From Malacoraja senta (lineage: Eukaryota): a stretch of 64,000 nt of DNA. Shown here piece by piece: positions 3,094 through 59,536 of this stretch. Location of the stretch: contig CM075984.1 of the NCBI GenBank assembly GCA_038087875.1, positions 34,100,001 through 34,164,000 on the forward strand, in the 5' to 3' direction. The translations under genes were made by a program, and so were the position numbers. How positions within the stretch are numbered: the first letter of the stretch is position 1; each line of letters opens with the position of its first letter. The notes beneath the pieces are model-generated. The model made no database searches. It had not been told where the DNA came from and was given only the letters and a program-made list of their open reading frames with translations.

Positions 3094-4098
3094 CTGAAAA
3101 TGGAAAAAAAGGTATTTAGATCATGCGGTATTTATAGGTGAAAAAAATCTGATTGAGACAAAGTATCAACATTTCCACCATGACAAATTATGAAATATGG
3201 TTAATAAAATGTGAAGAACCAAGACAATTTAGAAGGCAACATTATAAAATAACTTTCAGAATGACAAATAAACACACTTTCGACTCGAACTAGGGATCAT
3301 TGTTTAAAATACACGGTTATTCATTTATGACATCTATGGGATGTTTTATTTTCTCTGAGGTTTAGAATCTTTACCATACTTCCTCAAAGAGCAGGAATAG
3401 ATTCTTGATAAAGGTTAAGAGGGGAAAAGATTATTACTAGATAGAAATGTGATGTTTGGGTTACAATCAATCTGAATAAATGGTGGAATAGGCTGACAGA
3501 CATACTCCTGCTCCTAATCCATCTGTTTGTTCATGCCTCCTCTGTCAGAGAGTTGGAGTGACATTGACACTCACTCATGCAGCTTTGTTTACCCAGAAAC
3601 CAAGGCAGGCATTTACTCAGAAACCCACGAGGCAATCACTGGCTGCTGAGACAGAAGCATGAGCTTTATAGGATTAAATCTTGATCAACTTTTATGTACA
3701 AAAACTTCAAAGCCGTCCAATGGGTAGAAGGCATGGGGTTGAGTGGGGAAAATAGATCAGCCACGATTAAATGGCGGTGTAGTCTCGATGGGCCGTATGT
3801 CCTCATTCTGCCATATGGTCTTGCAACCACCATTCTCACCTCAAGCCTTTGCTGCTTATTCCACTCACCTGACAATCATCCCCTCCCCCACACCTGTATC
3901 CACCTATCACCCGCTAGACTTTCTTCCTTCCCCACCTCTATTTTCCAGCTCTCTCCACCCAACTCCAATTAGACCCAAAACATTATCTGTCCATTCCCTC
4001 CACAAATGCTGCCTGGTCTGTGGAGTTCCTCCAGCACCTTGTGTTTTGCTCAACATTCTGGCATCTGCAGTTTCTTGTGTCACCAGGTGTGCTCATAC

Positions 4099-4183
4099 CT
4101 GTAACTTTGATGCTCTTCACATGTTTGTTGGAGTTATTTGTCACTTGAACATTGATGTTGATGGGATCCCCGTGGTAATATAT
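4099..4183 (-). CDS. SAG: Arrestin exon 9
   Basis: [28 protein letters not shown]; 85 nt. Confidence 0.94.
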
Positions 4184-4753
4184 CTGAGGAGTAAAAATAA
4201 TCATCAGCTTAAATATTGTCCTTTTCTGTCTCCACTAAAACCAGTCACTCTTTCTGGTGCCTCATTCAATTGCCAAAGTTCATTCACAAAATGACTGAGA
4301 AAAATTCGGCATGGAAACAGGCCCTTTCTCCCACCTAGTCCACGTTGACCATTGATCACTCATTCACACTAGTTCTATGTTATCACACTCTCACATCCAG
4401 CCCCCTCACATTAGGAGCAATTTACGGAGGCCAATTAGCCTAAAGAAATTCACATCTTTGGGATGAGGCAGAAAATTGTAGCACCCGGAAGAAACCCACA
4501 CGGTCACAGGGAGAATGTACAAACTCAACGCAGTCAGCACCTGAGGTCAGGATCAAAACCAGGTCTCTGGCAAAATGTGGAAGCAGCTTTACCAGCTGTG
4601 CAAGTGGACTCTTTTTTATAAAAATTCAGATTTGGGCATTGTTGGCAATGACAGCATTTATCGCCTATCGTTCAAAGATATTGATTGGTAGATTAGCCTT
4701 CAGCATTCAAGGAGTGAAGTATTTACTTGGGGCTTCTATCGTGCGGCCCTCAC

Positions 4754-8521: not shown

Positions 8522-10217
8522 TTTTTTAAATTATTTTTTTATTTTAATTTTTTATTTATTTATTTTTTAATTTATATATTTATTTATTTATTAGAAGTAA
8601 GTACATTACATTTTGATGGTACCTTTTTACAGGTTCCCAGAATTATTAAAACATTCTATGTACAACTTCCTTTTTTTTTTTTTAGAAAGAAAGAAATGAG
8701 AAAGAAAGAAGTAGTGAAGAGTAAAGAAAAGTCTAGTGAGTGTGAGATAAAGAAAAGAAATAAGTAAGAAAGTGAAGCAGAAAGGAGATTCTCCCTCGCC
8801 ACAAGTCGATGCTTTTTTATATTCTTAATCATTTTTCGCCCAAACCCAGAATTTTTTAATTTTACAATACTATTGCACCACATGAATCCACAAGGTCAAT
8901 AAATGGAGACCAACTCGTTAAGAATTGGTCTTGTTTATCTATTAGGAGTCTCATTTCTTCCAAGTGGGCAGTTTCCAACATATTATCAATCCACATTTTG
9001 AGTGTTGGTATAGTAGCATTTTTCCAAAATTTAAGTACGAGTTTTTTTGCTATTATTAAACCATAATTAAAAAATGAAATTTGGGATATATTTAATTTGT
9101 TTCCGTCTCCTATTACTCCGAAGATAATCGTTTCCATATTAGGTTCCATTTTTATCTTAAATAAACTAGTAAATATATCAAATATATCACACCAAAATCC
9201 ATGAAGTTTTGTGCAAGAAACGAAAGAATGTGTGACATTGGCATTTTGAGAAAGACATTTATCGCAGATGGGAGAAATATTTGGATAGAATTTATTCAAC
9301 CTAGCTTTTGAATTATATAATCTATGTAATATTTTAAATTGAATTAAATTATGTCTGGCGTTAATCGAACATTTATGTATATATATCAAATACCTCTCCC
9401 ATGTTTCTTTAGAAATTGTTGTCATTAATTCTTTTTCCCAGTTTTCTCTAATTGCCTCTGTTGATGGCAATTCTCTATTAAGAATACTATTATATAAATA
9501 TGATATTCATTTTTGTGAGTCCGCCTTAATATTCATTGCTTCTTCCAATGGGTCTATCATTATGCTCTGTAGTCTTGGTATATATTTTTTTATAAAGTCA
9601 CATATCTGTAAATATTTAAAGTATTGGTTATTATTCAGATTAAATTTTTATTTTAATTGTTGAAATGATAATAAATTTCCCATTTCATACATGTCCCCCA
9701 CCTTTTTAATTCCCAATCTTTCCCATTGTCTATATGTTTTATCCATAAAAGATGGTTTAAATACCGAGTTATTCACTATTGGTGTTAATGATGATAAGTT
9801 CCTTAATTTTAAAGTTAATTTTATTTGTTTCCAAATTCGAATTATATTATGTATAATTGGATTCTTCTTATATAATGTATTATTCAATTTTATCGGAGAG
9901 AAGAGGATCGCTCCTAAATCGTACGGAAAACAATCGTCTTTCTCCATTCTTATCCATTCCATCTGTTGAGAAGGGCAGTCCAACCAATAAAAGATATTCT
10001 TAATATGCACTGCCCAATAATAATATAAAAAATTAGGCAGTGCAAGTCCCCCTACATCTTTAGGTTTACACAGATGATTTCTTTTAATTCTATGTGCTTT
10101 GTAGTCCCAAATAAAATTAGTAATATTAGAGTCTAGTTTTTTTAAGAAATATTTTGGTATATATATTGGTATGGATTGAAATAAATATATTATTTGTGGT
10201 AGAAATATCATTTTTAT
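8522..10217 (-). mobile_element. 5'-truncated L1/Tx1-type LINE
   Basis: ORF2 C-terminal ORFs (GGLALPN; CDKC..H..C zinc knuckle); A-rich tail; 11-bp TSD GTTTCCTGCCT at 8511-8521 and 10218-10228. Confidence 0.9.
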
Positions 10218-11089: not shown

Positions 11090-11180
11090 CTGTTAAAAGA
11101 AAGGACAGAAATACATATTATGGCAGGTCATAAATAACACTTAAAATAAGAACATCTGGTTATGCAAGATTATTAACAAC

Positions 11181-11377
11181 CTGAAAAGAGAAAGGCAAAG
11201 CTTTGTCTCCAATCTTCTTCATCAAGCGTTCCTGCAGCTTGGTTAGTGATTTCAATTCCTCGCCTGTTTGAGGGTACACCTGGACAGTAGATATATACAG
11301 GTCCCTTATAAAAGCCTGTCCGATCATCTCAGTGTCCTCTGGTCCATAATGGAAAGTACATTTCAGTCTGCAATAAA
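11181..11377 (-). CDS. SAG: Arrestin exon 5 (finger loop)
   Basis: VYCRLKCTFHYGPEDTEMIGQAFIRDLYISTVQVYPQTGEELKSLTKLQERLMKKIGDKALPFSFQ; 197 nt. Confidence 0.93.
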
Positions 11378-12517
11378 CTGGAGAGGCAATAATAGTGAAG
11401 ATTAGAGAGTTCGAGAATAATTTAAATTACACTGGATATACTGGGCAAGTCAGCTGGTTCCATAAAGGATCAAACATGCTGCTTATTGCTGGATCGTTCA
11501 GATGTGAGAATCTGATCAGAGGGAACTAACAATTCATTGTGATCTTTCCACAGATTTCTTGGAAGCTACTTATGATTTATCCTGAATCCCTACTATTAAG
11601 TTTGACGAAGCGCCTTTCGTATGCAACTTTGCTTCGTTTTTTCTGGGCTTCAAACATACAGCACAACCCACTTCCGTCAAATTATATTAATCTGGCAGCG
11701 CTTTTCATTCCTGAATCTGTATTTATTTGTCCATGGATTATTATTATGGAGATGAGCTTTGAAGCAATTCCTGATAATCAAATTCATTGATCTTATATTG
11801 GTAAAAGACACACAGTGGGTCTTTTGTCTGTGGCTGGTTTATTCCTTCTTTCTTTAGGCACCATTTGCATTTTCCACTGCCAAGGAGGGTGGTAATCTGA
11901 GGAAACGGGTTTATAAGTTAACACCAAGAACAATGGGAAGATGAGGTTTCTATATTATTAGCACTATGCACAGGAATGCACTGTCTGGTGGGGTGGTGGT
12001 ATTTAATCCAGAAACAACTTTCAAACGAGGACTGGTTAACTTCTTGATATGGAAATAAATTGTGGGAATAGAGTTGGGGACTAAATCTGATTGAATGCAA
12101 TGTTCAAACACAGGGCATTGCCTAGTTGTCTGCTTGGGTACACAATTAAACCCAGGGCTACTAGGTTTCTCAGGGCAACTAGGTTTCAGTAATAAACATT
12201 GGCCTTCACACATAGGTCCTCATGTTCAGAATGAATTTAAAAATAAATTACATTAAACAGATCAACATCTCCACAAAAACAGGAATGAAAAGAAGCTGTG
12301 TAAGTGAGTAAAATATTTCTCCTAACATCAGACGCAGGGGCTCCATGGTCTCATTTTTTAATGTTGAGCAAGAACTCTAACCAAATCTGGTCATTCCACT
12401 TTCACAGATTGCCAAATATTATTGGATTAAAAATGAAATATTGAGAGGTTTTGTTAAAGACTTTGTACAATTGATAATGCCAGGAAATTTTAATACTGCA
12501 GATGGTAAAGATCTCAC

Positions 12518-20205: not shown

Positions 20206-20278
20206 GCCCGGCTAGCTCAGTCGGTAGAGTGCGAGACTCATAATCACAAGGTCGTGAGTTCGAGCCCCACGTTGGGCG
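20206..20278 (+). tRNA. tRNA-Lys(CTT)-derived copy with anticodon CAT, probably a pseudogene
   Basis: 73 nt, 7 substitutions from canonical vertebrate tRNA-Lys-CTT; A/B boxes recognisable; two anticodon-stem mismatches and one T-stem mismatch. Confidence 0.8.
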
Positions 20279-36576: not shown

Positions 36577-36846
36577 GAGGTCTCAGTTTATAGTTTGCAG
36601 TCAGGCAACAGAGGCAAATCCCATAACACCAAACACTCCTGACTAGCCTACTGTGTCAAATGCTGACTGTAGATATGCTCCAAATGTCTCAATGTGCTCT
36701 AAAGCAGCAGCATCAATTACTGTCAGGAACACCTGTATCCATACAGCAAGCCTCCAGCTGCATAGAAAATGCAGGGTTTCCTGGGAGTGAGGATGTGGGA
36801 ATAATGCCCTGAGCAGTCAGACCTTTTACCTCTCATCACTGACCTC
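36577..36846 (-). ncRNA. SCARNA6: Composite C/D-H/ACA scaRNA, SCARNA6/U88-like
   Basis: Stem GAGGTC/GACCTC; box C GTGATGA; U5 Um41 guide GGTAAAAGGT + D' CTGA; H box ACAGTA; candidate CAB box TGAG; ACA; D box CTGA; 270 nt; intron 12, as recalled for human SCARNA6. Confidence 0.85.
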
Positions 36847-39135: not shown

Positions 39136-39416
39136 GAGGTCTCAGCTTGAAAACTTACAGTCATGCACCAGAGGTAAATCCCCACAATACCCAAAGCTCC
39201 TGGGCTACCAGTTTTGTGTGATGCCCATTGTGAAGACACTCCAAATTCCTCTTTGAGAATGTCAACTAAATCAGTGGCACAGTTACTGTCAGGAAGTCTA
39301 CTACCATCACAGCACACCTTGAGCAGGATGGGAAAGATAGGATCTCCTGGGAGCTAGCTGGCATGTGGGCATTTAATAAAGTGCTGTCGGACCTTTTACT
39401 TATCATCATTGACCTC
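39136..39416 (-). ncRNA. SCARNA5: Composite C/D-H/ACA scaRNA, SCARNA5/U87-like
   Basis: Terminal stem GAGGTC/GACCTC; box C ATGATGA; guide AGTAAAAGGT + D' CCGA (U5 loop I, Um41 at D+5); H box ACAGTA; guide AAGTTTTCAAG + D CTGA (U4 UUGAAAACUU, Am65); 281 nt; sense within ATG16L1, the known host gene. Confidence 0.9.
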
Positions 39417-40035: not shown

Positions 40036-40197
<162 letters not shown>

Positions 40198-45000: not shown

Positions 45001-46255
45001 TCAAATTGCAGATTAAAACTTATCATATTATGGTCACTACCTCCTAATGGTTCCTTTACTTTGAGTTCCCTTTATGAAATCCGGTTCTTTACACAACACT
45101 AAATCCAGAATTGCCTTCTCCCTGGTAGGCTCCAGTACAAGCTGCTCTAAGAATCCATCTCGGAGGCACTCTCTTGGGGTCCAGTACAAACTCCCTTTCT
45201 TGGGGTCCAGTACTGTTTGGGGGCCTGTAGACAACCATTAGGGTCTTTTTACCCTTAGAATTTCTCAGCTCTACCCATACCGACTCTACATCTTCTGATT
45301 CTTTGTCACCCCTCGCTAGGGACTGAATTTCATTCCTTACCAACAGAGCCACCCCATCCCCTCTGCCCACCTGTCTGTCTTTTCTATACGACGTACACCT
45401 CTGAATATTCAGTTCCCAGTCCTGATCCTCTTGTAGCCATGTCTCTGTAATTCCCACAACATCATACTTACCAATTTCTAACTGAGCCTCAAGCTCATCC
45501 ACTTTATTTCTTAAAATTCACCCATTCATCTATAACACTTTTAATTGTGTATTCACCTCCCCTCCCACACCGGTTCATATTTCACCTTAATTTACTATCT
45601 TATCCCTTCTTGAACTTAACGTCCCATTAATTTGGGTGTCTTTCATAACTTTTCCTGTACTCTCTTCCCCTTTAACTTCATCTTTATACTCCCAATTTGT
45701 CAACCCTCCCCCCACTATTTAGTTTAAACCCACCCATGTAGCACTAGCAAACCTGCCTGCCAGAATGTTGGTCCCCCTCTAGTTAAGGTGAAACCTGTCC
45801 CTTTTTTACAGGTCACCCCTACCCCAGAAGAGATCCCAGTGGTCTATAAATCTAAATCCCTGCTCCCTGCACCAGCCCCTCAGCCACATATTCAGATCCC
45901 CCATCTCCCTGTTCCTGTCCTCACCAGCACGAGGTACTGGAAGCAATCCAGAGATAAGCACCCTAGAAGTCCTGCTTTCAGCCTTCTTCCCAACTCTCTA
46001 AACTCACGTTGCAGAACCTCCTTCCTCTTCTTCCCGATGTAGTCTGTGCCCACATGCACAACAACTTCCGACTACTCTCCTTCCCTCTCGAGGATGTTCT
46101 GAAGTCGGTCCGAGACATCTTGAACCCTGGCACCAGGGAGGCAACAGACCATCCTCGAGTCTCGCCTGCCGCCACAGAATCTCCTGTCCGCACCTCGGAC
46201 AATGGAGTCACCCACCACTATGGCTCTGCCCGACGTCGGTCTCGCAGGCAGAATC
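42002..46255 (-). mobile_element. Long decayed CR1/L3 LINE interrupted by a nested insertion
   Basis: ORF1 esterase remnant near 46000-46200; APE endonuclease (YDVVGITETW) at 45089-45502; RT ([21 protein letters not shown]) at 43336-44171; 3' end at 42002-42349. Confidence 0.9.
42352..43100 (+). mobile_element. Young 5'-truncated CR1 nested in the opposite-strand CR1
   Basis: Uninterrupted 214-aa ORF2 C-terminus, (TTCTATG)n tail, short AATCC duplication at both junctions. Confidence 0.88.
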
Positions 46256-46343
46256 TCACCGAAAGGTACTTCTGAAGTACCTCTGGTAACACCAAAACAG
46301 ACACCGACCGGGTTATAGCCACATATCCACTCAACATTACAGA

Positions 46344-46590
46344 GAGGTCTCAGACTTGCACTAGCCCGTCATGATAAAAACATCATTTTATCTTTCTAGG
46401 TTAATTGTTCTATCAGACATCTACCAAAGATATGTCCCAAATCTTGCTCTCAAATAGTGGTGTTCATTACTGTTACAAACTCCTTTTTACCATCATAGCT
46501 AATCTATAGCAGGATGGGAAATGCAGGGGTTTCTGGAAATCAAGATGTGGGGATGGTCCTTGTGCTACCAGACCACTCATCATTGACCTC
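46344..46590 (-). ncRNA. Third U87/U88-family scaRNA paralog, divergent guides
   Basis: Same terminal stem, box C ATGATGA, H box ACAGTA and D box CTGA; shares TTTCCCATCCTGCT with the intron-10 copy and CCCTGCATTT with the intron-12 copy; 247 nt. Confidence 0.75.
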
Positions 46591-47772
46591 AATGACCAAT
46601 TTCATTTTTGGGAATTGCAATCAAAATGCAATGAACACATGTAAACATTAGTGCTTGTCTGCAAATGCAAGACAGCTTCCAAAGCTTTCAGTTACAGAAA
46701 TGGCAATTTTGAATTAAATGGTTAGGAATGCGACACAGTGCACGTTGAATCCGGGAAATCAGCAGATTGTCCCATACAGTGTGATTGATATATAGAAAGA
46801 ACTCCTGGATAGGGAAACAAAATAATTTAGAATCTGGCTAATGAAGTGAATTATCGGGATAATCTGGCCAAATGGACATTCTCAACTGCATCTCGACTGA
46901 ATGCATTGAGTCACAATTAACAGGTAAATCAGAAATCAAATCAACGTGTTTGTCCGTTAAACACATTGACAAAGTAATTGTGACATGTGAGAAAAATAAT
47001 TTGGGCGAGCGGGAAATAAGCGGAACGGGACTGATGGCATTGTGATGCTGAGAATCAGCATGGAGCAAATGAGCTGAATTAGGATAATGTGATTTGTAAT
47101 ATAATGTATTTAGATGTCATTATTAGTTATTATTAGCAACTCAAAAGTCTGATTTCCCTTGGATAAAAATGAAAACACTTTCTCCAATCCTTAAAATAAA
47201 TAATTAATATGCAAAACTAAGTACATTTTGCAATCTACCCTGCATTATCAATTAATCAATTTGATTCAGGAATGGCTTAAAATGAAGCAATTTTCTTTTT
47301 TGGAGCTGCACCGAAAATACTGTTTCCTTAAATCATGCTCACATTACTTCTCTACTGATCATGAATTTCACCTTTGATTTCTAACTTGTGCATTTGTTCC
47401 ATGTACAAGAAATCATTAAATTATTAATCATTTGAGGGTTGCTATGTAATATTAGATATTTGAATCAGTCAGGTGTACTCCAATGGTTTTAATTTTCCTA
47501 TACATTCCTCTAACAAATAAATTCACAGCCAGCCTGAATTAAGGTCAAGGAGGTTATTTCTGACAATTCTGCACCATCATCATTAAATGAATACTCAGCC
47601 CACATTTTGTTGCTTTCAATCAGGACTCAAAATGGCACTGAAAAACTAGCTCCCTTTTGGTCACATAGAATTTACAACACAGAAATAGGTTTATTGGTCA
47701 AAATGATTAAAGCAGTATTTATGCTCCATGTGAGGTTTCTCTCATTACAACACATTTCATTTGTATAATACA

Positions 47773-48117
47773 GTAAACTCTCGCAACAATGTACCCCTAT
47801 ATAGTGGATTTTGGTTATAGTGGACCGAGATGCCACGTGGTGTGCTTCCAGTTGCAGGAGCAGAAAGAACAAGCAGCATGAAGGTGGCGTGAGTACCAGA
47901 CCTGTTCTCAGAGCACTGCATCTGGGGCCATGGGCTCTGTGTCTCCCCAGCCTGTGAATTCGCACTTGTTATAACCCCCCCCCCCCCCACAACACCGAGT
48001 TACTTCCCACCCGGCTTCGGGTTAAACTTTACCTCCCGCTCTCGACTATAGTGGACAATCGGTAAAAACGGACACCATCCTGCTCCCCGTGGTTCGTTAT
48101 TGCAAGGGTCCTATTGC
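47773..48117. mobile_element. Degenerate pogo/Tigger-type MITE (duplicate at 54936-55280)
   Basis: TA-CAGTAAACTCTCGCAACAATG left end with an imperfect inverted counterpart at the right end; internal TATAGTGGA repeats. Confidence 0.55.
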
Positions 48118-48168
48118 ATTACTTGACCCTTCATGTATTTCTAACCTTTCCTTTGTTTGCATACTCAC

Positions 48169-48271
48169 AAACACGTGGAGTGGTGTGGTAGGTAATTGCA
48201 TCTGATTACAAGGTCCACTACAGACATCGTGGGCATCAATCACAGTCCCATGTAACGTGGGTGATCGTTTT
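48169..48271 (-). CDS. ATG16L1: ATG16L1 exon 9, duplicate copy
   Basis: Same sequence as 55332-55434. Confidence 0.6.
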
Positions 48272-50796
48272 CTAATGGCAGCAAACACAGAACATTTCAT
48301 TTACTCAACACCTTCAGAAACGGCATGATAAAAAAAAAAAATCAGGTGCAAACACACAGTACAAAGTGTGTATTTGAACAGATTCTCTGGCATGAAAACA
48401 CAAAGGAACTCATTTTGTTATCAACATAGAAATGTTATGGTCAAATGAAGTACTGAGTTATAAATGCCCGTTGGAGAGATGCATTCTACATTGACTGGAA
48501 GACCCAATTGCAATGCCAGTCTCTTCCAAGTTAGTCAATAATACCAAGGAGATTAACTGGTCTCAGTTGTTGTTGGGGTGGGGGTAAACCAGATTCCATT
48601 CCTGCTTACTATAAGAAGGTTTGCCGAAGTTGCACCTTAGGAGGTGACCGTATAGCCTCAGTCTTGTAGCAGAGTGGGCCCTTCGGCCCACCACATCCAT
48701 GCCCATCTTTTTGTCCATCTGTACTTGTCTCATTTGCCTGCATCTTTCTATGCCTTACCTATTTAAGTATCTGTCTAAATGTCTCAAACAGTGATTGTAT
48801 CGTATTCGACCATCACCTCTTATAGTTGTGTTCCAGACATCAACAACTCTGTGTAAACACTTTCCCATCAGATCCAATTTAATAATCCTTTCCCACACCT
48901 TAGACTTTTGGCTACTTGTTTTAGGTAACCCTATCAAGGGAATTTGTTTTGTCTGTCTACCTTATACATGCTTTTCATAATCTTATATCTATCAAGGCAC
49001 TCTTCAATCTCCAAAGCTCTAAGGAAAACAAGTTTGACTTGTCCAATCTCTCCCCATAATTAAAGAATCTCAATTCATACAACATTCCAGTGAATCTCCC
49101 CTGCACTCCCATCAACCAAACCATTCCTACAATGTGGCAACCAGAATAGCACACAAGGCTCCTGAAACAGTCTAACCACATCAGTCTGAAGGGTCTCAAC
49201 CCGAAACGTCACCCATTCTTTCTCTCCAGAGATGCTGCCTGTCCCGCTGAGTTACTCCAGCATTTTGTGTCTATCTATAATTTAAAACAGCATCTGCAGT
49301 TCCTTTCTACACTAACCAGTGTTTTGTTAAGTTGCATCATATGGTCCCAACTCTTATATTATATGCCCCGACCTATGAAGACAAGTACGCCTTATGCCTT
49401 CCGATGGCGCCGAGGTAGAGATGGTTTAAAACTTCCAATTCCGAGGAGTAAATATAACCAACAACTTCTCCTGGACCACCACTATTGAAGCAATGACCAA
49501 GAAAGCACACCAACACCTCTACTTCCTTTGAAGGCTTAGGTAGTTTGTCATGTCCCCAACAATGCTCAACAACATCTGGATGCGCCGTAGAAAGCATTTT
49601 ATCGGGATGCATCACAGCTTGGTTTGGGAATAGCTCCCGTAAGAAATTGCAGCGAATTGTGGACACAGCCCAGATCATCACATGAACCAAACTCCCTTCC
49701 ATTGACTCCATTTATCCCTCACACTGCCCCTGCAATCAAGTATGGGTCGCACCCTAGCCACTCCCTCTTCTCCCCATCCCCATCGGACACAAGGTATAGA
49801 AGTGTGAAAACACACACCTCCGGATTCTGGGACAGTGACAGGACAGTGTAGCTTTTTTTCCTGGAGCACAGGACACGGAGAGGTGCCATTATAAAGATAT
49901 ACAAAATCATGAGAGGCATAGATAATGTGAATAGTCAGAGCTTTTTTCCCCAGAATAAAAGGAGTCTAAAACTGGAAGGTTCAGATTTACAGAGTAAGGA
50001 AAGATTTAAAGGGTACCCGGGGCGACTTTCTCATGTAGAGGTAGGCGGGTATGCAGAAAAAAATCCTAGATTAAGATTTTTAGACATGTACATGGATGGG
50101 AAACGTTTAAAGGAATATGTGCCAAATTCAGACAAATGGGATTAACTCAGTAATCAACTGTCGCCCAAAGGGCCAGTTTCTGTGCTGTACAACTCTGTCC
50201 AAGTTTAAAAGCTCACTGTGAAGCACAAGATCCTTCCCTTATCATAACAGAGTTTTTGCGATGTGCATTGCGAATTGTCAGAAAGAAAAGGCACAAAAAG
50301 GTTTTCGACTGAAGAGAAAAATTATTGGGATACAAACGACTGATCTGGGATAAGTTGGCAAGTGCTCACATGGAGTATGGCCCAACATATTTTTACAGGA
50401 TTGAACGTTAACTTAAAAAATTATGAAGGCATTTGGTCAAACTTCCCAACACTGTGCACTGGCAATAAAATGCCTTCCACTGGTATATTCACAAACTCTC
50501 TTCAAAACCCCTTTATAAATTGTGTAGTGTATTCAATGAACAAGCATCTTAAACTTGAGTTAATTTCTGTAGATGGGGAATAGAGGCAACACAACCCCAA
50601 ATAAAATGTTAACCAATTAATATCATAAATGGTAGGGAGAGGTTCTTTGTTAGATATAGAACAGGATGATCAGAGATGTATAATCATTAACGAGAAACAG
50701 AGCTAAGTTATATATGATTGAGCAAATATCAAGGTAAATCAGATCTAAAATACACTAATCATTAAAATAGAAACGGGAAATAAGTTCTTAACGTAC

Positions 50797-50847
50797 CCAA
50801 AGATATTACCAATAGAGTCCAAGAGTCCAGATGCCTGTGAAGTCCTT
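50797..50847 (-). CDS. ATG16L1: ATG16L1 exon 8, duplicate copy
   Basis: Same sequence as 57960-58010. Confidence 0.6.
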
Positions 50848-51782
50848 CTGTACAAAGCAGAACAGAAATTGATTGTGGATGATCAGCCATGATCACAATG
50901 AATGGCGGTGCAGGCTTGAAGGGCCAAATGGCCTCCTCCTATTTTCTATGTTTCTATGAAATAATGTTTGCTGATGCTGGTTTAGAAAAAAAGTCAAAGT
51001 GCTGGAGTAACTCAGCAGGTCAGGCAGCATCTCTGAAGAACATGGACATGTGAAGTTTTATGTCAGGACCCTTCTTCACCTAAAGTGCACTCACCTTTAT
51101 GTTTGTAATTCGAGATCACAAAATTGTAATTATGTCATTTGTAATTTGTAATCACAAAATTGTCCAATAGTCCCTACCATACAAAGACGGAAAAATGGTC
51201 TCTCAACTCTAACAATGAAACTTTCAAAGAAAATATAAGAAACTTGATCGTATTCATTAAGATTATAAAGGAATTAACAGAACTGAGCTAAATTATTCTT
51301 GGTGATAATTCCCAAGAAAAACAAAAGAAAAGGGTGTCAGGTCAGGAGGGGCTTTTGCTGTCAAAGGGGAATTAATGGGGATGACAAAGGGGGAATCTTT
51401 TTATTAGGGTCAATTAGACACGTTTGCAGGAAGAGACTGAGGAATAAAAGGGGATGATGAGCAGGCATGACTAGCCCACAAAATAGCTGCAAGAACAATA
51501 GTTAAGAATGGTCATAATGTTAGATTAATATCAAGCATTTAATTTTGGATTTCACTAAAAGGTAACATTAAGCAAGTTCACTGAACACTTGTTCCATTGA
51601 ATCACTACAAACAGCCAGTAGCATTGCAGGTTTTGATCGACTGTATAAAAACCCCAACACAAAACAATGGGGAAGTATTGCAGGTCACAATCACTGGCAG
51701 AAGAAAGGTGTATGCTCTCACATTATGCAAGCACAAGATGCACTTCATGCCTCCCTGTAATTCTCAGCTATCAGGCACTCAC

Positions 51783-51869
51783 CTGGGAGTCCTGTGCGTA
51801 GCTCGCACCGCTGATGTTTCTTCTGCGGTGTCAGGCCCTTCTTCACCAAGCACCTCTATATCATCCTCA
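51783..51869 (-). CDS. ATG16L1: ATG16L1 exon 7, duplicate copy (probable assembly duplication)
   Basis: Same sequence as 58946-59032, offset 7163. Confidence 0.6.
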
Positions 51870-52218
51870 CTGCCAATCAGAGCAGGAAAAAAAGCAAACA
51901 TAAGTCTTCTACTCCATTTGTGTGGGTTACCAGCATAGACCATTGTGATGGAACTGTAACACGAACGTCATACCTGCTCAGAATTACTACATATAATCAA
52001 CTATTTCAAAGGAGACTCNNNNNNNNNNNNNNNNNNNNNNNNNNNNNNNNNNNNNNNNNNNNNNNNNNNNNNNNNNNNNNNNNNNNNNNNNNNNNNNNNN
52101 NNNNNNNNNNNNNNNNNNNNNNNNNNNNNNNNNNNNNNNNNNNNNNNNNNNNNNNNNNNNNNNNNNNNNNNNNNNNNNNNNNNNNNNNNNNNNNNNNNNN
52201 NNNNNNNNNNNNNNNNNN

Positions 52219-53418
52219 TTACTTTGAGTTCCCTTTATGAAATCCGGTTCTTTACACAACACTAAATCCAGAATTGCCTTCTCCCTGGTAGGCTCCAGTA
52301 CAAGCTGCTCTAAGAATCCATCTCGGAGGCACTCTCTTGGGGTCCAGTACAAACTCCCTTTCTTGGGGTCCAGTACTGTTTGGGGGCCTGTAGACAACCA
52401 TTAGGGTCTTTTTACCCTTAGAATTTCTCAGCTCTACCCATACCGACTCTACATCTTCTGATTCTTTGTCACCCCTCGCTAGGGACTGAATTTCATTCCT
52501 TACCAACAGAGCCACCCCATCCCCTCTGCCCACCTGTCTGTCTTTTCTATACGACGTACACCTCTGAATATTCAGTTCCCAGTCCTGATCCTCTTGTAGC
52601 CATGTCTCTGTAATTCCCACAACATCATACTTACCAATTTCTAACTGAGCCTCAAGCTCATCCACTTTATTTCTTAAAATTCACCCATTCATCTATAACA
52701 CTTTTAATTGTGTATTCACCTCCCCTCCCACACCGGTTCATATTTCACCTTAATTTACTATCTTATCCCTTCTTGAACTTAACGTCCCATTAATTTGGGT
52801 GTCTTTCATAACTTTTCCTGTACTCTCTTCCCCTTTAACTTCATCTTTATACTCCCAATTTGTCAACCCTCCCCCCACTATTTAGTTTAAACCCACCCAT
52901 GTAGCACTAGCAAACCTGCCTGCCAGAATGTTGGTCCCCCTCTAGTTAAGGTGAAACCTGTCCCTTTTTTACAGGTCACCCCTACCCCAGAAGAGATCCC
53001 AGTGGTCTATAAATCTAAATCCCTGCTCCCTGCACCAGCCCCTCAGCCACATATTCAGATCCCCCATCTCCCTGTTCCTGTCCTCACCAGCACGAGGTAC
53101 TGGAAGCAATCCAGAGATAAGCACCCTAGAAGTCCTGCTTTCAGCCTTCTTCCCAACTCTCTAAACTCACGTTGCAGAACCTCCTTCCTCTTCTTCCCGA
53201 TGTAGTCTGTGCCCACATGCACAACAACTTCCGACTACTCTCCTTCCCTCTCGAGGATGTTCTGAAGTCGGTCCGAGACATCTTGAACCCTGGCACCAGG
53301 GAGGCAACAGACCATCCTCGAGTCTCGCCTGCCGCCACAGAATCTCCTGTCCGCACCTCGGACAATGGAGTCACCCACCACTATGGCTCTGCCCGACGTC
53401 GGTCTCGCAGGCAGAATC
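52219..53418 (-). mobile_element. CR1 5' portion, duplicate copy
   Basis: Same sequence as 45056-46255. Confidence 0.75.
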
Positions 53419-53506
53419 TCACCGAAAGGTACTTCTGAAGTACCTCTGGTAACACCAAAACAGACACCGACCGGGTTATAGCCACATATCCACTCAACAT
53501 TACAGA

Positions 53507-53753
53507 GAGGTCTCAGACTTGCACTAGCCCGTCATGATAAAAACATCATTTTATCTTTCTAGGTTAATTGTTCTATCAGACATCTACCAAAGATATGTCC
53601 CAAATCTTGCTCTCAAATAGTGGTGTTCATTACTGTTACAAACTCCTTTTTACCATCATAGCTAATCTATAGCAGGATGGGAAATGCAGGGGTTTCTGGA
53701 AATCAAGATGTGGGGATGGTCCTTGTGCTACCAGACCACTCATCATTGACCTC
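53507..53753 (-). ncRNA. Duplicate of third scaRNA paralog inside the duplicated segment
   Basis: Same sequence as 46344-46590. Confidence 0.55.
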
Positions 53754-55331
53754 AATGACCAATTTCATTTTTGGGAATTGCAATCAAAATGCAATGAACA
53801 CATGTAAACATTAGTGCTTGTCTGCAAATGCAAGACAGCTTCCAAAGCTTTCAGTTACAGAAATGGCAATTTTGAATTAAATGGTTAGGAATGCGACACA
53901 GTGCACGTTGAATCCGGGAAATCAGCAGATTGTCCCATACAGTGTGATTGATATATAGAAAGAACTCCTGGATAGGGAAACAAAATAATTTAGAATCTGG
54001 CTAATGAAGTGAATTATCGGGATAATCTGGCCAAATGGACATTCTCAACTGCATCTCGACTGAATGCATTGAGTCACAATTAACAGGTAAATCAGAAATC
54101 AAATCAACGTGTTTGTCCGTTAAACACATTGACAAAGTAATTGTGACATGTGAGAAAAATAATTTGGGCGAGCGGGAAATAAGCGGAACGGGACTGATGG
54201 CATTGTGATGCTGAGAATCAGCATGGAGCAAATGAGCTGAATTAGGATAATGTGATTTGTAATATAATGTATTTAGATGTCATTATTAGTTATTATTAGC
54301 AACTCAAAAGTCTGATTTCCCTTGGATAAAAATGAAAACACTTTCTCCAATCCTTAAAATAAATAATTAATATGCAAAACTAAGTACATTTTGCAATCTA
54401 CCCTGCATTATCAATTAATCAATTTGATTCAGGAATGGCTTAAAATGAAGCAATTTTCTTTTTTGGAGCTGCACCGAAAATACTGTTTCCTTAAATCATG
54501 CTCACATTACTTCTCTACTGATCATGAATTTCACCTTTGATTTCTAACTTGTGCATTTGTTCCATGTACAAGAAATCATTAAATTATTAATCATTTGAGG
54601 GTTGCTATGTAATATTAGATATTTGAATCAGTCAGGTGTACTCCAATGGTTTTAATTTTCCTATACATTCCTCTAACAAATAAATTCACAGCCAGCCTGA
54701 ATTAAGGTCAAGGAGGTTATTTCTGACAATTCTGCACCATCATCATTAAATGAATACTCAGCCCACATTTTGTTGCTTTCAATCAGGACTCAAAATGGCA
54801 CTGAAAAACTAGCTCCCTTTTGGTCACATAGAATTTACAACACAGAAATAGGTTTATTGGTCAAAATGATTAAAGCAGTATTTATGCTCCATGTGAGGTT
54901 TCTCTCATTACAACACATTTCATTTGTATAATACAGTAAACTCTCGCAACAATGTACCCCTATATAGTGGATTTTGGTTATAGTGGACCGAGATGCCACG
55001 TGGTGTGCTTCCAGTTGCAGGAGCAGAAAGAACAAGCAGCATGAAGGTGGCGTGAGTACCAGACCTGTTCTCAGAGCACTGCATCTGGGGCCATGGGCTC
55101 TGTGTCTCCCCAGCCTGTGAATTCGCACTTGTTATAACCCCCCCCCCCCCCACAACACCGAGTTACTTCCCACCCGGCTTCGGGTTAAACTTTACCTCCC
55201 GCTCTCGACTATAGTGGACAATCGGTAAAAACGGACACCATCCTGCTCCCCGTGGTTCGTTATTGCAAGGGTCCTATTGCATTACTTGACCCTTCATGTA
55301 TTTCTAACCTTTCCTTTGTTTGCATACTCAC

Positions 55332-55434
55332 AAACACGTGGAGTGGTGTGGTAGGTAATTGCATCTGATTACAAGGTCCACTACAGACATCGTGGGCATC
55401 AATCACAGTCCCATGTAACGTGGGTGATCGTTTT
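55332..55434 (-). CDS. ATG16L1: ATG16L1 exon 9 (T300 exon)
   Basis: KRSPTLHGTVIDAHDVCSGPCNQMQLPTTPLHVF; 103 nt, phase 2 to 0, joins exon 10 in frame. Confidence 0.88.
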
Positions 55435-57959
55435 CTAATGGCAGCAAACACAGAACATTTCATTTACTCAACACCTTCAGAAACGGCATGATAAAAAAAA
55501 AAAATCAGGTGCAAACACACAGTACAAAGTGTGTATTTGAACAGATTCTCTGGCATGAAAACACAAAGGAACTCATTTTGTTATCAACATAGAAATGTTA
55601 TGGTCAAATGAAGTACTGAGTTATAAATGCCCGTTGGAGAGATGCATTCTACATTGACTGGAAGACCCAATTGCAATGCCAGTCTCTTCCAAGTTAGTCA
55701 ATAATACCAAGGAGATTAACTGGTCTCAGTTGTTGTTGGGGTGGGGGTAAACCAGATTCCATTCCTGCTTACTATAAGAAGGTTTGCCGAAGTTGCACCT
55801 TAGGAGGTGACCGTATAGCCTCAGTCTTGTAGCAGAGTGGGCCCTTCGGCCCACCACATCCATGCCCATCTTTTTGTCCATCTGTACTTGTCTCATTTGC
55901 CTGCATCTTTCTATGCCTTACCTATTTAAGTATCTGTCTAAATGTCTCAAACAGTGATTGTATCGTATTCGACCATCACCTCTTATAGTTGTGTTCCAGA
56001 CATCAACAACTCTGTGTAAACACTTTCCCATCAGATCCAATTTAATAATCCTTTCCCACACCTTAGACTTTTGGCTACTTGTTTTAGGTAACCCTATCAA
56101 GGGAATTTGTTTTGTCTGTCTACCTTATACATGCTTTTCATAATCTTATATCTATCAAGGCACTCTTCAATCTCCAAAGCTCTAAGGAAAACAAGTTTGA
56201 CTTGTCCAATCTCTCCCCATAATTAAAGAATCTCAATTCATACAACATTCCAGTGAATCTCCCCTGCACTCCCATCAACCAAACCATTCCTACAATGTGG
56301 CAACCAGAATAGCACACAAGGCTCCTGAAACAGTCTAACCACATCAGTCTGAAGGGTCTCAACCCGAAACGTCACCCATTCTTTCTCTCCAGAGATGCTG
56401 CCTGTCCCGCTGAGTTACTCCAGCATTTTGTGTCTATCTATAATTTAAAACAGCATCTGCAGTTCCTTTCTACACTAACCAGTGTTTTGTTAAGTTGCAT
56501 CATATGGTCCCAACTCTTATATTATATGCCCCGACCTATGAAGACAAGTACGCCTTATGCCTTCCGATGGCGCCGAGGTAGAGATGGTTTAAAACTTCCA
56601 ATTCCGAGGAGTAAATATAACCAACAACTTCTCCTGGACCACCACTATTGAAGCAATGACCAAGAAAGCACACCAACACCTCTACTTCCTTTGAAGGCTT
56701 AGGTAGTTTGTCATGTCCCCAACAATGCTCAACAACATCTGGATGCGCCGTAGAAAGCATTTTATCGGGATGCATCACAGCTTGGTTTGGGAATAGCTCC
56801 CGTAAGAAATTGCAGCGAATTGTGGACACAGCCCAGATCATCACATGAACCAAACTCCCTTCCATTGACTCCATTTATCCCTCACACTGCCCCTGCAATC
56901 AAGTATGGGTCGCACCCTAGCCACTCCCTCTTCTCCCCATCCCCATCGGACACAAGGTATAGAAGTGTGAAAACACACACCTCCGGATTCTGGGACAGTG
57001 ACAGGACAGTGTAGCTTTTTTTCCTGGAGCACAGGACACGGAGAGGTGCCATTATAAAGATATACAAAATCATGAGAGGCATAGATAATGTGAATAGTCA
57101 GAGCTTTTTTCCCCAGAATAAAAGGAGTCTAAAACTGGAAGGTTCAGATTTACAGAGTAAGGAAAGATTTAAAGGGTACCCGGGGCGACTTTCTCATGTA
57201 GAGGTAGGCGGGTATGCAGAAAAAAATCCTAGATTAAGATTTTTAGACATGTACATGGATGGGAAACGTTTAAAGGAATATGTGCCAAATTCAGACAAAT
57301 GGGATTAACTCAGTAATCAACTGTCGCCCAAAGGGCCAGTTTCTGTGCTGTACAACTCTGTCCAAGTTTAAAAGCTCACTGTGAAGCACAAGATCCTTCC
57401 CTTATCATAACAGAGTTTTTGCGATGTGCATTGCGAATTGTCAGAAAGAAAAGGCACAAAAAGGTTTTCGACTGAAGAGAAAAATTATTGGGATACAAAC
57501 GACTGATCTGGGATAAGTTGGCAAGTGCTCACATGGAGTATGGCCCAACATATTTTTACAGGATTGAACGTTAACTTAAAAAATTATGAAGGCATTTGGT
57601 CAAACTTCCCAACACTGTGCACTGGCAATAAAATGCCTTCCACTGGTATATTCACAAACTCTCTTCAAAACCCCTTTATAAATTGTGTAGTGTATTCAAT
57701 GAACAAGCATCTTAAACTTGAGTTAATTTCTGTAGATGGGGAATAGAGGCAACACAACCCCAAATAAAATGTTAACCAATTAATATCATAAATGGTAGGG
57801 AGAGGTTCTTTGTTAGATATAGAACAGGATGATCAGAGATGTATAATCATTAACGAGAAACAGAGCTAAGTTATATATGATTGAGCAAATATCAAGGTAA
57901 ATCAGATCTAAAATACACTAATCATTAAAATAGAAACGGGAAATAAGTTCTTAACGTAC

Positions 57960-58010
57960 CCAAAGATATTACCAATAGAGTCCAAGAGTCCAGATGCCTG
58001 TGAAGTCCTT
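57960..58010 (-). CDS. ATG16L1: ATG16L1 exon 8 (beta-isoform cassette exon)
   Basis: RTSQASGLLDSIGNIFG (human SQPAGGLLDSITNIFG); 51 nt, frame-preserving. Confidence 0.9.
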
Positions 58011-58945
58011 CTGTACAAAGCAGAACAGAAATTGATTGTGGATGATCAGCCATGATCACAATGAATGGCGGTGCAGGCTTGAAGGGCCAAATGGCCTCCT
58101 CCTATTTTCTATGTTTCTATGAAATAATGTTTGCTGATGCTGGTTTAGAAAAAAAGTCAAAGTGCTGGAGTAACTCAGCAGGTCAGGCAGCATCTCTGAA
58201 GAACATGGACATGTGAAGTTTTATGTCAGGACCCTTCTTCACCTAAAGTGCACTCACCTTTATGTTTGTAATTCGAGATCACAAAATTGTAATTATGTCA
58301 TTTGTAATTTGTAATCACAAAATTGTCCAATAGTCCCTACCATACAAAGACGGAAAAATGGTCTCTCAACTCTAACAATGAAACTTTCAAAGAAAATATA
58401 AGAAACTTGATCGTATTCATTAAGATTATAAAGGAATTAACAGAACTGAGCTAAATTATTCTTGGTGATAATTCCCAAGAAAAACAAAAGAAAAGGGTGT
58501 CAGGTCAGGAGGGGCTTTTGCTGTCAAAGGGGAATTAATGGGGATGACAAAGGGGGAATCTTTTTATTAGGGTCAATTAGACACGTTTGCAGGAAGAGAC
58601 TGAGGAATAAAAGGGGATGATGAGCAGGCATGACTAGCCCACAAAATAGCTGCAAGAACAATAGTTAAGAATGGTCATAATGTTAGATTAATATCAAGCA
58701 TTTAATTTTGGATTTCACTAAAAGGTAACATTAAGCAAGTTCACTGAACACTTGTTCCATTGAATCACTACAAACAGCCAGTAGCATTGCAGGTTTTGAT
58801 CGACTGTATAAAAACCCCAACACAAAACAATGGGGAAGTATTGCAGGTCACAATCACTGGCAGAAGAAAGGTGTATGCTCTCACATTATGCAAGCACAAG
58901 ATGCACTTCATGCCTCCCTGTAATTCTCAGCTATCAGGCACTCAC

Positions 58946-59032
58946 CTGGGAGTCCTGTGCGTAGCTCGCACCGCTGATGTTTCTTCTGCGGTGTCAGGCC
59001 CTTCTTCACCAAGCACCTCTATATCATCCTCA
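58946..59032 (-). CDS. ATG16L1: ATG16L1 exon 7 (acidic FIP200-binding region)
   Basis: EDDIEVLGEEGPDTAEETSAVRATHRTP; 87 nt. Confidence 0.92.
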
Positions 59033-59536
59033 CTGCCAATCAGAGCAGGAAAAAAAGCAAACATAAGTCTTCTACTCCATTTGTGTGGGTTACCAGCATA
59101 GACCATTGTGATGGAACTGTAACACGAACGTCATACCTGCTCAGAATTACTACATATAATCAACTATTTCAAAGGAGACTCTCAACATGGGTTTGAAGGC
59201 TTTGCACCATGAACCATTTTTTCATTTTATTCTTCAAGACAGAGATTGTTATTTGCACGCACAATGTGAAGATGCCTCAGCTACAACTGGAAGTAATATC
59301 AATTTTTCTACAAGCATTATTGTTCTCATTTGTTAAGTAGTTTTGAAAAAAAAAGATAACTCCAGACAGCAAACAGAATCTCTTAAGTAATTTGTCTCAA
59401 AGTTTCACTAACATTGAGAGACTGAGGTTACAACAGAAAACCACTGGCAAAAGCTGCAAGTGAGATGGCAAATTCCACTCACGCACTACAGGGATTACTG
59501 CAACAAAAGTAACTCATGGCAACATGTGTGACTCAC

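What the first reader, a model, noticed from the sequence alone, without database searches (positions are those of the whole stretch)
46344..46590. Third U87/U88-family scaRNA with U5 guide deleted and an unrecognised D-box guide
Seen: a 247-nt intron-9 element, sense to ATG16L1. It keeps the 6-bp terminal stem, box C, H box and box D of the two other intronic scaRNAs. The U5 guide is collapsed (GTGGT-CTGG instead of GAGGTAAAAGGT-CTGA), and the D-box guide reads ACGGGCTAGTGCAAGT, unlike either paralog. Known: human ATG16L1 hosts two such RNAs (SCARNA5, SCARNA6). Inference: intact boxes and stem despite internal divergence suggest a still-processed RNA that may have been retargeted. The predicted target is 5'-(A)CUUGCACUAGCCC-3', methylated at the G after CUU. 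I find only a 7-nt match to U1 (UUGCACU), and its D+5 register is not Am70.
Basis: partly seen in the sequence, partly recalled or inferred. Interest (0 to 1): 0.75.

Follow-up and report, generated by a model that had tools for sequence, protein, structure and literature searches.

The report
Decaying third U87/U88-family scaRNA copy
The element is a real but eroding third copy of the U87/U88 small Cajal-body RNA in intron 9 of a skate-like fish's ATG16L1 gene; it is old, has lost its U5 guide, shows no sign of a conserved new target, and has been deleted outright in the closest sequenced relatives.

Summary
On the minus strand at 46344-46590 (ATG16L1 sense, intron 9) lies a 247-nt homolog of the two recognised SCARNA5/6 copies. 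It scores 36 bits on Rfam RF00478 (threshold 68). It has an intact 6-bp terminal stem, box C, H box and box D. Seven nt of the U5 guide are deleted and D' reads CUGG.

It lies in a 6,963-bp block repeated at 100% identity across a 200-N gap, probably an unmerged assembly overlap.

Seven other chondrichthyan ATG16L1 loci show the intron-9 copy is ancient:
- Callorhinchus: intact, 87 bits, U5 guide present.
- Heptranchias: 56 bits.
- Narcine: no Rfam match.
- Amblyraja, Leucoraja, Rhinoraja, Pristis: cleanly deleted.

The elasmobranch intron-9 copies form one orthologous clade, with batoid branches 3-4 times longer than copies A and B.

Against aligned flanking intron, the proposed D-box guide (7/15 invariant) and the D' region (4/9) evolve at the flank rate (46%). 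The guide differs in every lineage. Only the RNP core motifs are conserved above background.

Verdict: a guide-dead relic under relaxed constraint, possibly still processed. Retargeting is not supported. Expression could not be tested. In a lizard, intron 9 hosts the U87-type copy.

The parts
46344..46590 (-). Intron-9 SCARNA5/6-like element (247 nt), the finding
   Evidence: Rfam RF00478 36 bits, E 4.3e-08, full model. Orthologs in Narcine, Heptranchias and Callorhinchus intron 9.
53507..53753 (-). Identical second copy of the element inside the gap-flanking duplicated block
   Evidence: Exact match.
46585..46590 (-). 5' half of the terminal stem, GAGGUC
   Evidence: Pairs with 46344-46349 in the MFE fold.
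46577..46583 (-). Box C, AUGAUGA
   Evidence: Conserved across the intron-9 copies.
46568..46571 (-). Remnant of box D' (CUGG), preceded by only 5 nt where the U5-U41 guide should be (7-nt deletion)
   Evidence: Alignment to the model and to copies A and B.
46490..46518 (-). Upper part of the 5' H/ACA hairpin, the best-preserved internal stem
   Evidence: 17/29 three-way invariant.
46468..46473 (-). H box ACAGUA; the stem just upstream is broken (GUAACAGUAA)
   Evidence: 7/7 invariant for ACAGUAA.
46411..46413 (-). AUA at the position of the ACA box
46354..46369 (-). Stretch upstream of box D, the proposed new guide ACGGGCUAGUGCAAGU
   Evidence: Differs in every lineage; 7/15 three-way invariant, equal to the flank rate.
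46350..46353 (-). Box D, CUGA
46344..46349 (-). 3' half of the terminal stem, GACCUC
39138..39414 (-). Copy A (intron 10), U87/SCARNA5-type with both the U5-U41 and U4-A65 guides
   Evidence: Rfam 87.7 bits. 97.8% identical in three skates.
36579..36844 (-). Copy B (intron 12), U88/SCARNA6-type with the U5-U41 guide only
   Evidence: Rfam 80.4 bits. 96-99.6% identical in three skates.
48169..48273 (-). ATG16L1 exon 9 (RKRSPTLHGTV...PLHVF)
   Evidence: tblastn with batoid ATG16L1.
40036..40146 (-). ATG16L1 exon 10 ([14 protein letters not shown]...)
   Evidence: tblastn.
45056..52018 (.). First copy of the 6,963-bp block (holds exons 7-9 and the element); ends exactly at the N gap
   Evidence: 100% identical to 52219-59181.
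52219..59181 (.). Second copy of the block; starts exactly after the N gap (52019-52218)

Best explanation
The element is the window species' ortholog of an old third member of the U87/U88 (SCARNA5/6) composite box C/D-H/ACA scaRNA family. It sits in ATG16L1 intron 9, the same intron that hosts the U87-type scaRNA in a lizard, and in chicken according to the literature.

In chondrichthyans two further copies, in introns 10 and 12, carry the U5-U41 guide, and copy A also carries the U4-A65 guide. That made the intron-9 copy redundant (inference). In elasmobranchs its U5 guide was destroyed in a different way in each lineage, and no replacement guide became fixed. The copy then drifted at close to the neutral rate and was deleted several times in batoids.

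The window's copy is one of the survivors. It keeps an intact terminal stem, box C, box D and H box, so it may still be excised from the intron and bound by core snoRNP proteins (inferred, not shown). It has no usable D' guide: only 5 nt remain and D' reads CUGG. Its D guide has no conserved complementarity, and its H/ACA domain is damaged. It most likely guides nothing and is a relic on the way to loss.
For: - Homology and orthology: Rfam 36 bits, E 4e-8. nhmmer finds intron-9 orthologs in Narcine, Heptranchias and Callorhinchus. The ML tree puts window, Narcine and Heptranchias intron-9 copies in one clade (99/98) that follows the species tree.
- Decay series of Rfam scores for the intron-9 copy: Callorhinchus 87, Heptranchias 56, window 36, Narcine none.
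- Clean deletions without Ns in Amblyraja, Leucoraja, Rhinoraja and Pristis. In the skates, copies A and B stay 96-99.6% identical to the window.
- Rates: intron-9 copies are 65-68% identical pairwise, against 79-85% for A and B over the same species pairs. Batoid terminal branches are 0.32-0.34, against about 0.08-0.13.
- Intron 9 itself aligns at 60-70% across batoids and shark.
- The D guide (7/15) and D' region (4/9) are invariant at the flank rate of 46%.
- The guide sequences differ in all four species.
- Only 65% of consensus pairs are kept, against 93-100% in batoid A and B.
- The lizard has family members in introns 9 and 11, matching chicken (PMC2653536).
Against: - The RNP core motifs are conserved well above the flank rate in three lineages separated since the shark-batoid split: stem plus box C 11/14, box D plus stem 8/10, H box 7/7, about 31/37 combined against 46%. 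The two Narcine box changes (UGAUGG, UUGA) both still allow G-U pairing. Selection on RNP assembly therefore persisted for a long time and could still act.
- The element as a whole is slightly better conserved than its flanks (57% against 46% invariant, p = 0.009).
- No RNA data could be obtained, so accumulation of the RNA is neither shown nor excluded.
- No search against the species' own snRNA, rRNA or tRNA was possible, so a lineage-specific new target is not formally excluded.
Confidence: 0.7

Rival explanations
1. Retargeted functional guide. After losing the U5 guide, the RNA acquired a new D-box guide that directs 2'-O-methylation of a new target, 5'-CUUGCACUAGCCC-3'.
For: Intact box C, box D and 6-bp terminal stem. 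A 16-nt stretch directly upstream of box D that differs from both paralogs. RNP core motifs conserved above background.
Against: - The guide stretch evolves at the flank rate (7/15 invariant).
- It differs in window, Narcine, Heptranchias and Callorhinchus, with no common target.
- The element is deleted in the three nearest sequenced skates and in Pristis.
Confidence: 0.07
2. Orphan scaRNA with a function that does not depend on a guide. The RNA is still processed into a stable C/D (and possibly H/ACA) RNP, and selection acts on the RNP core. Possible roles include influencing splicing of the neighbouring alternative exons 8 and 9 of ATG16L1, or titrating core proteins.
For: Core motifs are conserved across window, Narcine and Heptranchias while the guides drift. 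The Narcine box changes are G-U compatible. Published work shows that a U87 construct lacking the H/ACA domain still accumulates (PMC6298559), so H/ACA damage need not prevent accumulation.
Against: Repeated complete deletion in batoids argues that it is dispensable. Overall rate is about 0.8 of neutral. Stems are progressively lost. There is no expression evidence.
Confidence: 0.15
3. The motif conservation is maintained not by selection on this copy but by occasional gene conversion from copies A and B in the same gene.
For: The three Callorhinchus copies cluster together and are 82-91% identical to each other (ungapped), which shows concerted evolution in this family. The two lizard copies also cluster.
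Against: In elasmobranchs the three paralog classes form separate clades that follow the species tree. No lineage-specific variants shared between the window's intron-9 copy and its A or B copy were evident in the alignments.
Confidence: 0.08

Closest known systems
SCARNA5 (U87) and SCARNA6 (U88), Rfam RF00478: composite box C/D-H/ACA Cajal-body RNAs in ATG16L1 introns
   Same: Same host gene and strand. Same overall architecture: terminal stem, box C, D' region, two-hairpin H/ACA insert with an H box, C'-like region, box D. Full-length alignment to the family model. Same intron as the U87-type copy in lizard and chicken.
   Different: Scores 36 bits against the family threshold of 68. The U5-U41 antisense element is deleted and D' reads CUGG. 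There is no U4-A65 element. ACA reads AUA. About a third of the consensus pairs are lost and the 3' hairpin apex is deleted. It evolves 3-4 times faster than the two bona fide copies.
Callorhinchus milii intron-9 copy (L006:6890-7161)
   Same: Same intron and same family.
   Different: The chimaera copy is intact (87 bits, U5 guide AGUAAAAGGU-CUGA) and is homogenised with its own copy A (89-91% identity). In the chimaera it is the intron-12 copy that looks degraded.
snoRNA/scaRNA pseudogenes and orphan paralogs produced by intragenic duplication (e.g. PMC1687206, 'Mammalian snoRNAs are mobile genetic elements'; seen as title and abstract only)
   Same: A redundant paralog in a neighbouring intron of the same host gene loses its antisense elements while the boxes persist longest.
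   Different: This one is unusually old (it predates the shark-batoid split) and is traceable because chondrichthyan introns evolve slowly enough to align.

Membership tests
SCARNA5/6 (U87/U88), Rfam RF00478 | Score at or above the family's curated gathering threshold (68 bits) | tested here: not met
   36 bits, E 4.3e-08 in a local scan, full model 1-265. Not reported in the gathering scan of the window.
SCARNA5/6 (U87/U88), Rfam RF00478 | Common descent with family members (homology) | tested here: met
   nhmmer hits to copies A and B and to intron-9 copies in other species. Tree places it in an orthologous clade inside the family. The Callorhinchus intron-9 copy scores 87 bits.
SCARNA5/6 (U87/U88), Rfam RF00478 | Terminal stem with box C (RUGAUGA) and box D (CUGA) | tested here: met
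   GAGGUC/GACCUC, AUGAUGA, CUGA.
SCARNA5/6 (U87/U88), Rfam RF00478 | Antisense element to U5 loop I upstream of D' (targets U41) | tested here: not met
   7-nt deletion; only GUGGU is left and D' reads CUGG.
SCARNA5 (U87) specifically | Antisense element to U4 (GUUUUCAAG-type) upstream of box D (targets A65) | tested here: not met
   Reads ACGGGCUAGUGCAAGU. Copy A has GUUUUCAAG. U4-A65/66 assignment from PMC2653536 and PMC7960923.
SCARNA5/6 (U87/U88), Rfam RF00478 | Internal H/ACA domain: two hairpins, H box, ACA box | tested here: inconclusive
   H box is intact and the upper 5' hairpin is kept. ACA reads AUA, the basal stem next to H is broken, and the 3' hairpin has many non-pairs and an apical deletion.
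scaRNA (Cajal-body RNAs) | CAB box (UGAG) in an H/ACA hairpin loop | tested here: inconclusive
   UGAG is present at 46449-46452 in the 3' hairpin region (coordinates counted from the sequence). Whether it lies in a terminal loop is unclear after the deletion.
SCARNA5/6 (U87/U88), Rfam RF00478 | Intronic, sense strand of ATG16L1 | tested here: met
   Exon map.
SCARNA5/6 (U87/U88), Rfam RF00478 | Accumulates as a stable ~250-270-nt RNA | not testable with these tools
   The runs found for this organism were genomic DNA.

The most novel reading that the evidence does not exclude
A composite scaRNA has kept its RNP-assembly core since before the shark-batoid split while both guide elements drift freely. 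Either it is an orphan Cajal-body RNP with a guide-independent role (for example in processing of its own host intron, next to the alternative exons 8 and 9 of ATG16L1), or it acquires lineage-specific targets, the window's D guide being one such new specificity.
Probability: 0.12. Interest if true: 0.6.

Novelty: new member of a known kind. Interest (0 to 1): 0.3.

Why it matters
Taken alone, the element is an ordinary decaying paralog. The comparison adds three modest points.
- Cartilaginous fishes carry three U87/U88-family loci in ATG16L1 (introns 9, 10 and 12), where a lizard has two (introns 9 and 11; a published chicken survey reports the same two). Only intron 9 is shared.
- Redundant U5-U41 guides decayed reciprocally: the intron-9 copy in elasmobranchs, and apparently the intron-12 copy in the chimaera.
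- Chondrichthyan introns evolve slowly enough that a flank-calibrated test can separate selection on RNP core motifs from neutral drift of guide elements.

For annotation: the element should not be called a functional scaRNA, and the assembly carries a probable false 7-kb duplication containing three ATG16L1 exons.

Tried and rejected
- Expression. Both sequencing-run runs (candidate; copy A as control) and the single read-laying run were used. The runs holding the candidate (X1) and the related runs (X9, X10, X13) turned out to be genomic DNA, with flat single-copy word depth, so they say nothing about RNA. X9 lacking the candidate reflects low coverage, not lack of expression. The RNA-type runs found for copy A belong to other organisms. 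No RNA run of the window's organism was offered.
- MFE z-scores do not discriminate: -1.8 for the candidate, -1.6 and -1.3 for A and B.
- The first ortholog search with a carp ATG16L1 returned only teleosts. X2 isoforms were not indexed. Hypanus and Chiloscyllium loci gave no DNA.
- Chance similarity or a Rfam false positive was rejected by the cross-species orthologs.
- A recent retroposed or duplicated copy was rejected, because the intron-9 copies form an old clade that follows the species tree.
- A target search against snRNA, rRNA or tRNA was not done. The window holds no snRNA gene, no vertebrate snRNA collection is reachable with these tools, and I did not type sequences from memory.
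- Earlier notes of the scan: nothing found.

Full report
**What is there**

Read on the minus strand, 46590 down to 46344 gives a 247-nt sequence. Its features are:
- terminal stem GAGGUC / GACCUC;
- box C AUGAUGA;
- an H box ACAGUA;
- box D CUGA directly before the 3' stem half.

A gathering-threshold Rfam scan of the window reports two SCARNA6 (RF00478) matches on the same strand: 39138-39414 (copy A, 87.7 bits) and 36579-36844 (copy B, 80.4 bits). It does not report the candidate. A permissive scan of 1.4 kb around the candidate finds it over the full model length at 36 bits, E 4.3e-08. It has a 7-nt gap where the family has GUAAAAGGU, and many non-canonical pairs in the outer stems and the 3' hairpin.

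Copy A carries GUAAAAGGU-CCGA and GUUUUCAAG-CUGA. Copy B carries only the first of these. In the literature these are the U5-U41 and U4-A65 guides of U87/SCARNA5 and U88/SCARNA6 (PMC2653536; PMC7960923). The 3' end of human U87, read from a published probe, also shows GUUUUCAAU-CUGA (PMC6298559).

**Host gene and intron**

Short peptide motifs and tblastn with ATG16L1 proteins place exons 3-18 of ATG16L1 on the minus strand. The order along the gene is:
- exon 9 (~48169-48273, ending ...PLHVF);
- the candidate;
- exon 10 (40036-40146, [10 protein letters not shown]...);
- copy A;
- exons 11 and 12;
- copy B;
- exon 13.

The three elements therefore lie in introns 9, 10 and 12.

The block 45056-52018 is identical, over 6,963 bp without a mismatch, to 52219-59181. 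The two copies abut the 200-N gap (52019-52218) on either side. The block contains exons 7, 8 and 9 as well as the candidate, which therefore appears again at 53507-53753.

All seven other chondrichthyan loci carry these exons once. An unmerged overlap of two contig ends is the simplest explanation.

**Read data**

The only run holding the candidate (X1), and three further runs holding copy A (X9, X10, X13), were laid on 46019-52018. They have flat single-copy word depth over unique intron, so they are genomic DNA and give no information on RNA.

They do show two things. An independent contig matches 46350-48706 without any difference. Two related organisms (D and E) carry an orthologous intron at about 90% identity.

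Those organisms share 36-40% of sampled 31-mers of copy A, yet did not reach the 5% listing threshold for the candidate. That fits a candidate diverging like ordinary intron while copy A is constrained. No RNA run of the window's organism was offered, so expression is untested.

**Orthologous loci**

Using a shark-like part of a chimeric protein as query, I obtained chondrichthyan ATG16L1 proteins and their longest isoforms. I fetched these gene loci:

| Locus | Species |
|---|---|
| L001 | Amblyraja radiata |
| L002 | Leucoraja erinacea |
| L003 | Rhinoraja longicauda |
| L004 | Pristis pectinata |
| L005 | Narcine bancroftii |
| L006 | Callorhinchus milii |
| L007 | Heptranchias perlo |

The window's exons are closest to the skates.

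Copies A and B are present in all seven species, in introns 10 and 12. In the three skates they are 97.8% (A) and 96-99.6% (B) identical to the window.

The candidate has no counterpart in intron 9 of the three skates or of Pristis, but does in three other species:
- Narcine, L005:13060-13327;
- Heptranchias, L007:28202-28471;
- Callorhinchus, L006:6890-7161.

Intron-to-intron comparison shows the flanks align and the element is specifically missing.
- Amblyraja and Leucoraja lack window ~47429-43143.
- Rhinoraja aligns to 46744 and resumes at 44245.
- In Pristis the alignment resumes about 20 nt after the element's 3' end.

None of these introns contains Ns.

**State of the intron-9 copy across species**

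| Species | Rfam bits |
|---|---|
| Callorhinchus | 87 |
| Heptranchias | 56 |
| Window | 36 |
| Narcine | no match at E 0.1 |

The U5 guide region reads as follows:
- Callorhinchus: AGUAAAAGGU-CUGA (intact);
- Heptranchias: GACAGGUGGU-CUGA;
- Narcine: a shortened stretch with no D' box;
- window: the 7-nt deletion with CUGG.

These are three different lesions.

The stretch before box D reads:
- Callorhinchus: ACUGCAAACCACAAG (like copy B);
- Heptranchias: ACUUGAACCUGCAAG;
- Narcine: ACUGGAAUGUACAGGU;
- window: ACGGGCUAGUGCAAGU.

There is no common target. Narcine's box C is UGAUGG and its box D is UUGA. Both changes would still allow G-U pairs in the canonical stem of the K-turn (my reading of the alignment).

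**Rates**

Pairwise identity over the same species pairs, gaps excluded:

| Comparison | Copy A | Copy B | Intron-9 copy |
|---|---|---|---|
| Window - Narcine | 83% | 85% | 68% |
| Window - Heptranchias | 80.5% | 80% | 67% |

An ML tree supports the following.
- Window, Narcine and Heptranchias intron-9 copies form one clade (99/98), with the two batoids as sisters (95/88). They are orthologs of one old copy.
- That clade is moderately supported as sister to the copy-B clade (83/84).
- Terminal branches are 0.32 (window) and 0.34 (Narcine). The corresponding A and B lineages are about 0.08-0.13.
- The three Callorhinchus copies cluster together and are 82-91% identical to each other (ungapped), which indicates concerted evolution there.

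On a consensus structure derived from the A and B copies, batoid A and B keep 93-100% of 43 pairs. The window's intron-9 copy keeps 65%, Narcine 74% and Heptranchias 79%.

**Is that rate neutral?**

Intron 9 as a whole aligns among the window, Narcine, Pristis and even Heptranchias at 60-70% identity, so a flank-calibrated test is possible. I used a three-way alignment of the element plus about 380 nt upstream and 90 nt downstream.

| Region | Three-way invariant columns | P against the flank rate |
|---|---|---|
| Flanks | 46% (138/302) | - |
| Whole element | 57% (136/238) | 0.009 (Fisher) |
| 5' stem plus box C | 11/14 | 0.013 |
| Box D plus 3' stem | 8/10 | 0.03 |
| H box | 7/7 | 0.004 |
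| ACA region | 5/6 | 0.07 |
| Proposed D guide | 7/15 | 0.57 |
| D' region | 4/9 | 0.66 |
| Element without core motifs | 51% (88/172) | - |

The RNP-assembly core has been under selection for a substantial part of the time since these lineages split. The guide regions have drifted like intron.

**Outgroup**

In the lizard Podarcis muralis (L008) the family model finds two members.
- One is at 9838-10114 (62.5 bits), between the exon ending ...ALCVF and the exon starting [10 protein letters not shown]. That is intron 9.
- The other is at 11773-12042 (114.5 bits), in intron 11.

This agrees with the chicken annotation (U87 in intron 9, U87/U88 in intron 11; PMC2653536). The lizard intron-9 copy has the U4 guide (GUUUUCAAG-CUGA) but a mutated U5 guide. 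The intron-11 copy has the U5 guide.

The candidate's intron is thus the tetrapod U87 position, while chondrichthyans have additional copies in introns 10 and 12. With one outgroup, and with concerted evolution in some lineages, the tree cannot say which chondrichthyan copy is the true ortholog of tetrapod SCARNA5.

**Interpretation**

The best-supported account has these steps.
1. Shown: an old intron-9 family member, redundant with two neighbouring copies that carry the same U5-U41 guide, lost that guide in elasmobranchs.
2. Shown: it acquired no conserved replacement and evolved at roughly 0.8 of the local neutral rate.
3. Shown: it was deleted at least twice, probably three times, in batoids.
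4. Inferred: the window's copy is a survivor with an intact terminal C/D core. It may therefore still be excised and bound by core proteins. A U87 construct without its H/ACA domain is reported to accumulate (PMC6298559).
5. Shown: it has no usable D' guide and a damaged H/ACA domain. Its D guide shows no sign of constraint.

I put 0.7 on 'guide-dead relic under relaxed constraint', 0.15 on a still-selected orphan RNP with a guide-independent role, and 0.07 on true retargeting. Gene conversion from the paralogs could explain part of the motif conservation (0.08).

**Limits**

- No RNA evidence could be obtained.
- No target search against the species' own RNAs was possible.
- The flank alignments with Heptranchias are gappy, which depresses their identity.
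- The consensus structure used for pair counting is dominated by near-identical skate sequences.
- The statements about K-turn geometry and about the U1 register rest on my own knowledge, not on a tool result.

Noticed in passing
window 45056-52018 and 52219-59181, gap 52019-52218: A 6,963-bp block containing ATG16L1 exons 7-9 is repeated at 100% identity on both sides of a 200-N gap. This is probably an unmerged contig overlap, and it would corrupt any gene model of ATG16L1 in this assembly.
   Followed up: partly
window 39138-39414 (-); L001:20578-20854, L002:20702-20978, L003:20316-20592: In the window and all three skates, box D' of copy A reads CCGA instead of CUGA (GUAAAAGGUCCGA). Pristis, Narcine, Heptranchias and Callorhinchus have CUGA. 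This looks like a skate-specific D' variant in an otherwise strongly conserved scaRNA.
   Followed up: no
L006:11052-11303 (Callorhinchus, intron 12): The chimaera's intron-12 copy falls below the Rfam threshold, has AAUAAAAGGU in the U5 guide and a weakened terminal stem, and keeps only 60% of consensus pairs. Its intron-9 copy is intact. This is the reverse of the elasmobranch pattern.
   Followed up: partly
L008:9838-10114 and 11773-12042 (Podarcis muralis): The lizard copies sit in introns 9 and 11, not 10 and 12 as in chondrichthyans. The intron-9 copy has the U4 guide but a mutated U5 guide, and the intron-11 copy has the U5 guide only, so the two guides appear to be divided between the copies.
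   Followed up: partly
window ~46600-46641 (-) and further upstream in intron 9: Short blocks upstream of the element (for example CAUGUGUUCAUUG and UUGCAAUUCCCAA) are conserved among window, Narcine and Heptranchias. They are unexplained conserved intron sequence, or part of an extended processing context.
   Followed up: no
window 20206-20278 (+): tRNA match, 48.4 bits; the anticodon loop reads CUCAUAA, which suggests tRNA-Met. It could be a gene or a SINE-derived copy.
   Followed up: no
window ~3900-4250 and ~11160-11430 (-): Stop-free stretches resembling arrestin exons ([26 protein letters not shown]; LKSLTKLQERLMKKIGDKALPFSF) lie downstream of ATG16L1. From memory, this fits the human ATG16L1-SAG neighbourhood.
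   Followed up: no
window 46019-46258 and 49019-51218: Very high word depth in all four DNA runs marks high-copy repeats. One begins about 85 nt downstream of the element. Intron 9 of the window is inflated by such insertions relative to the skates (8.0 kb against 3.1-5.4 kb).
   Followed up: no
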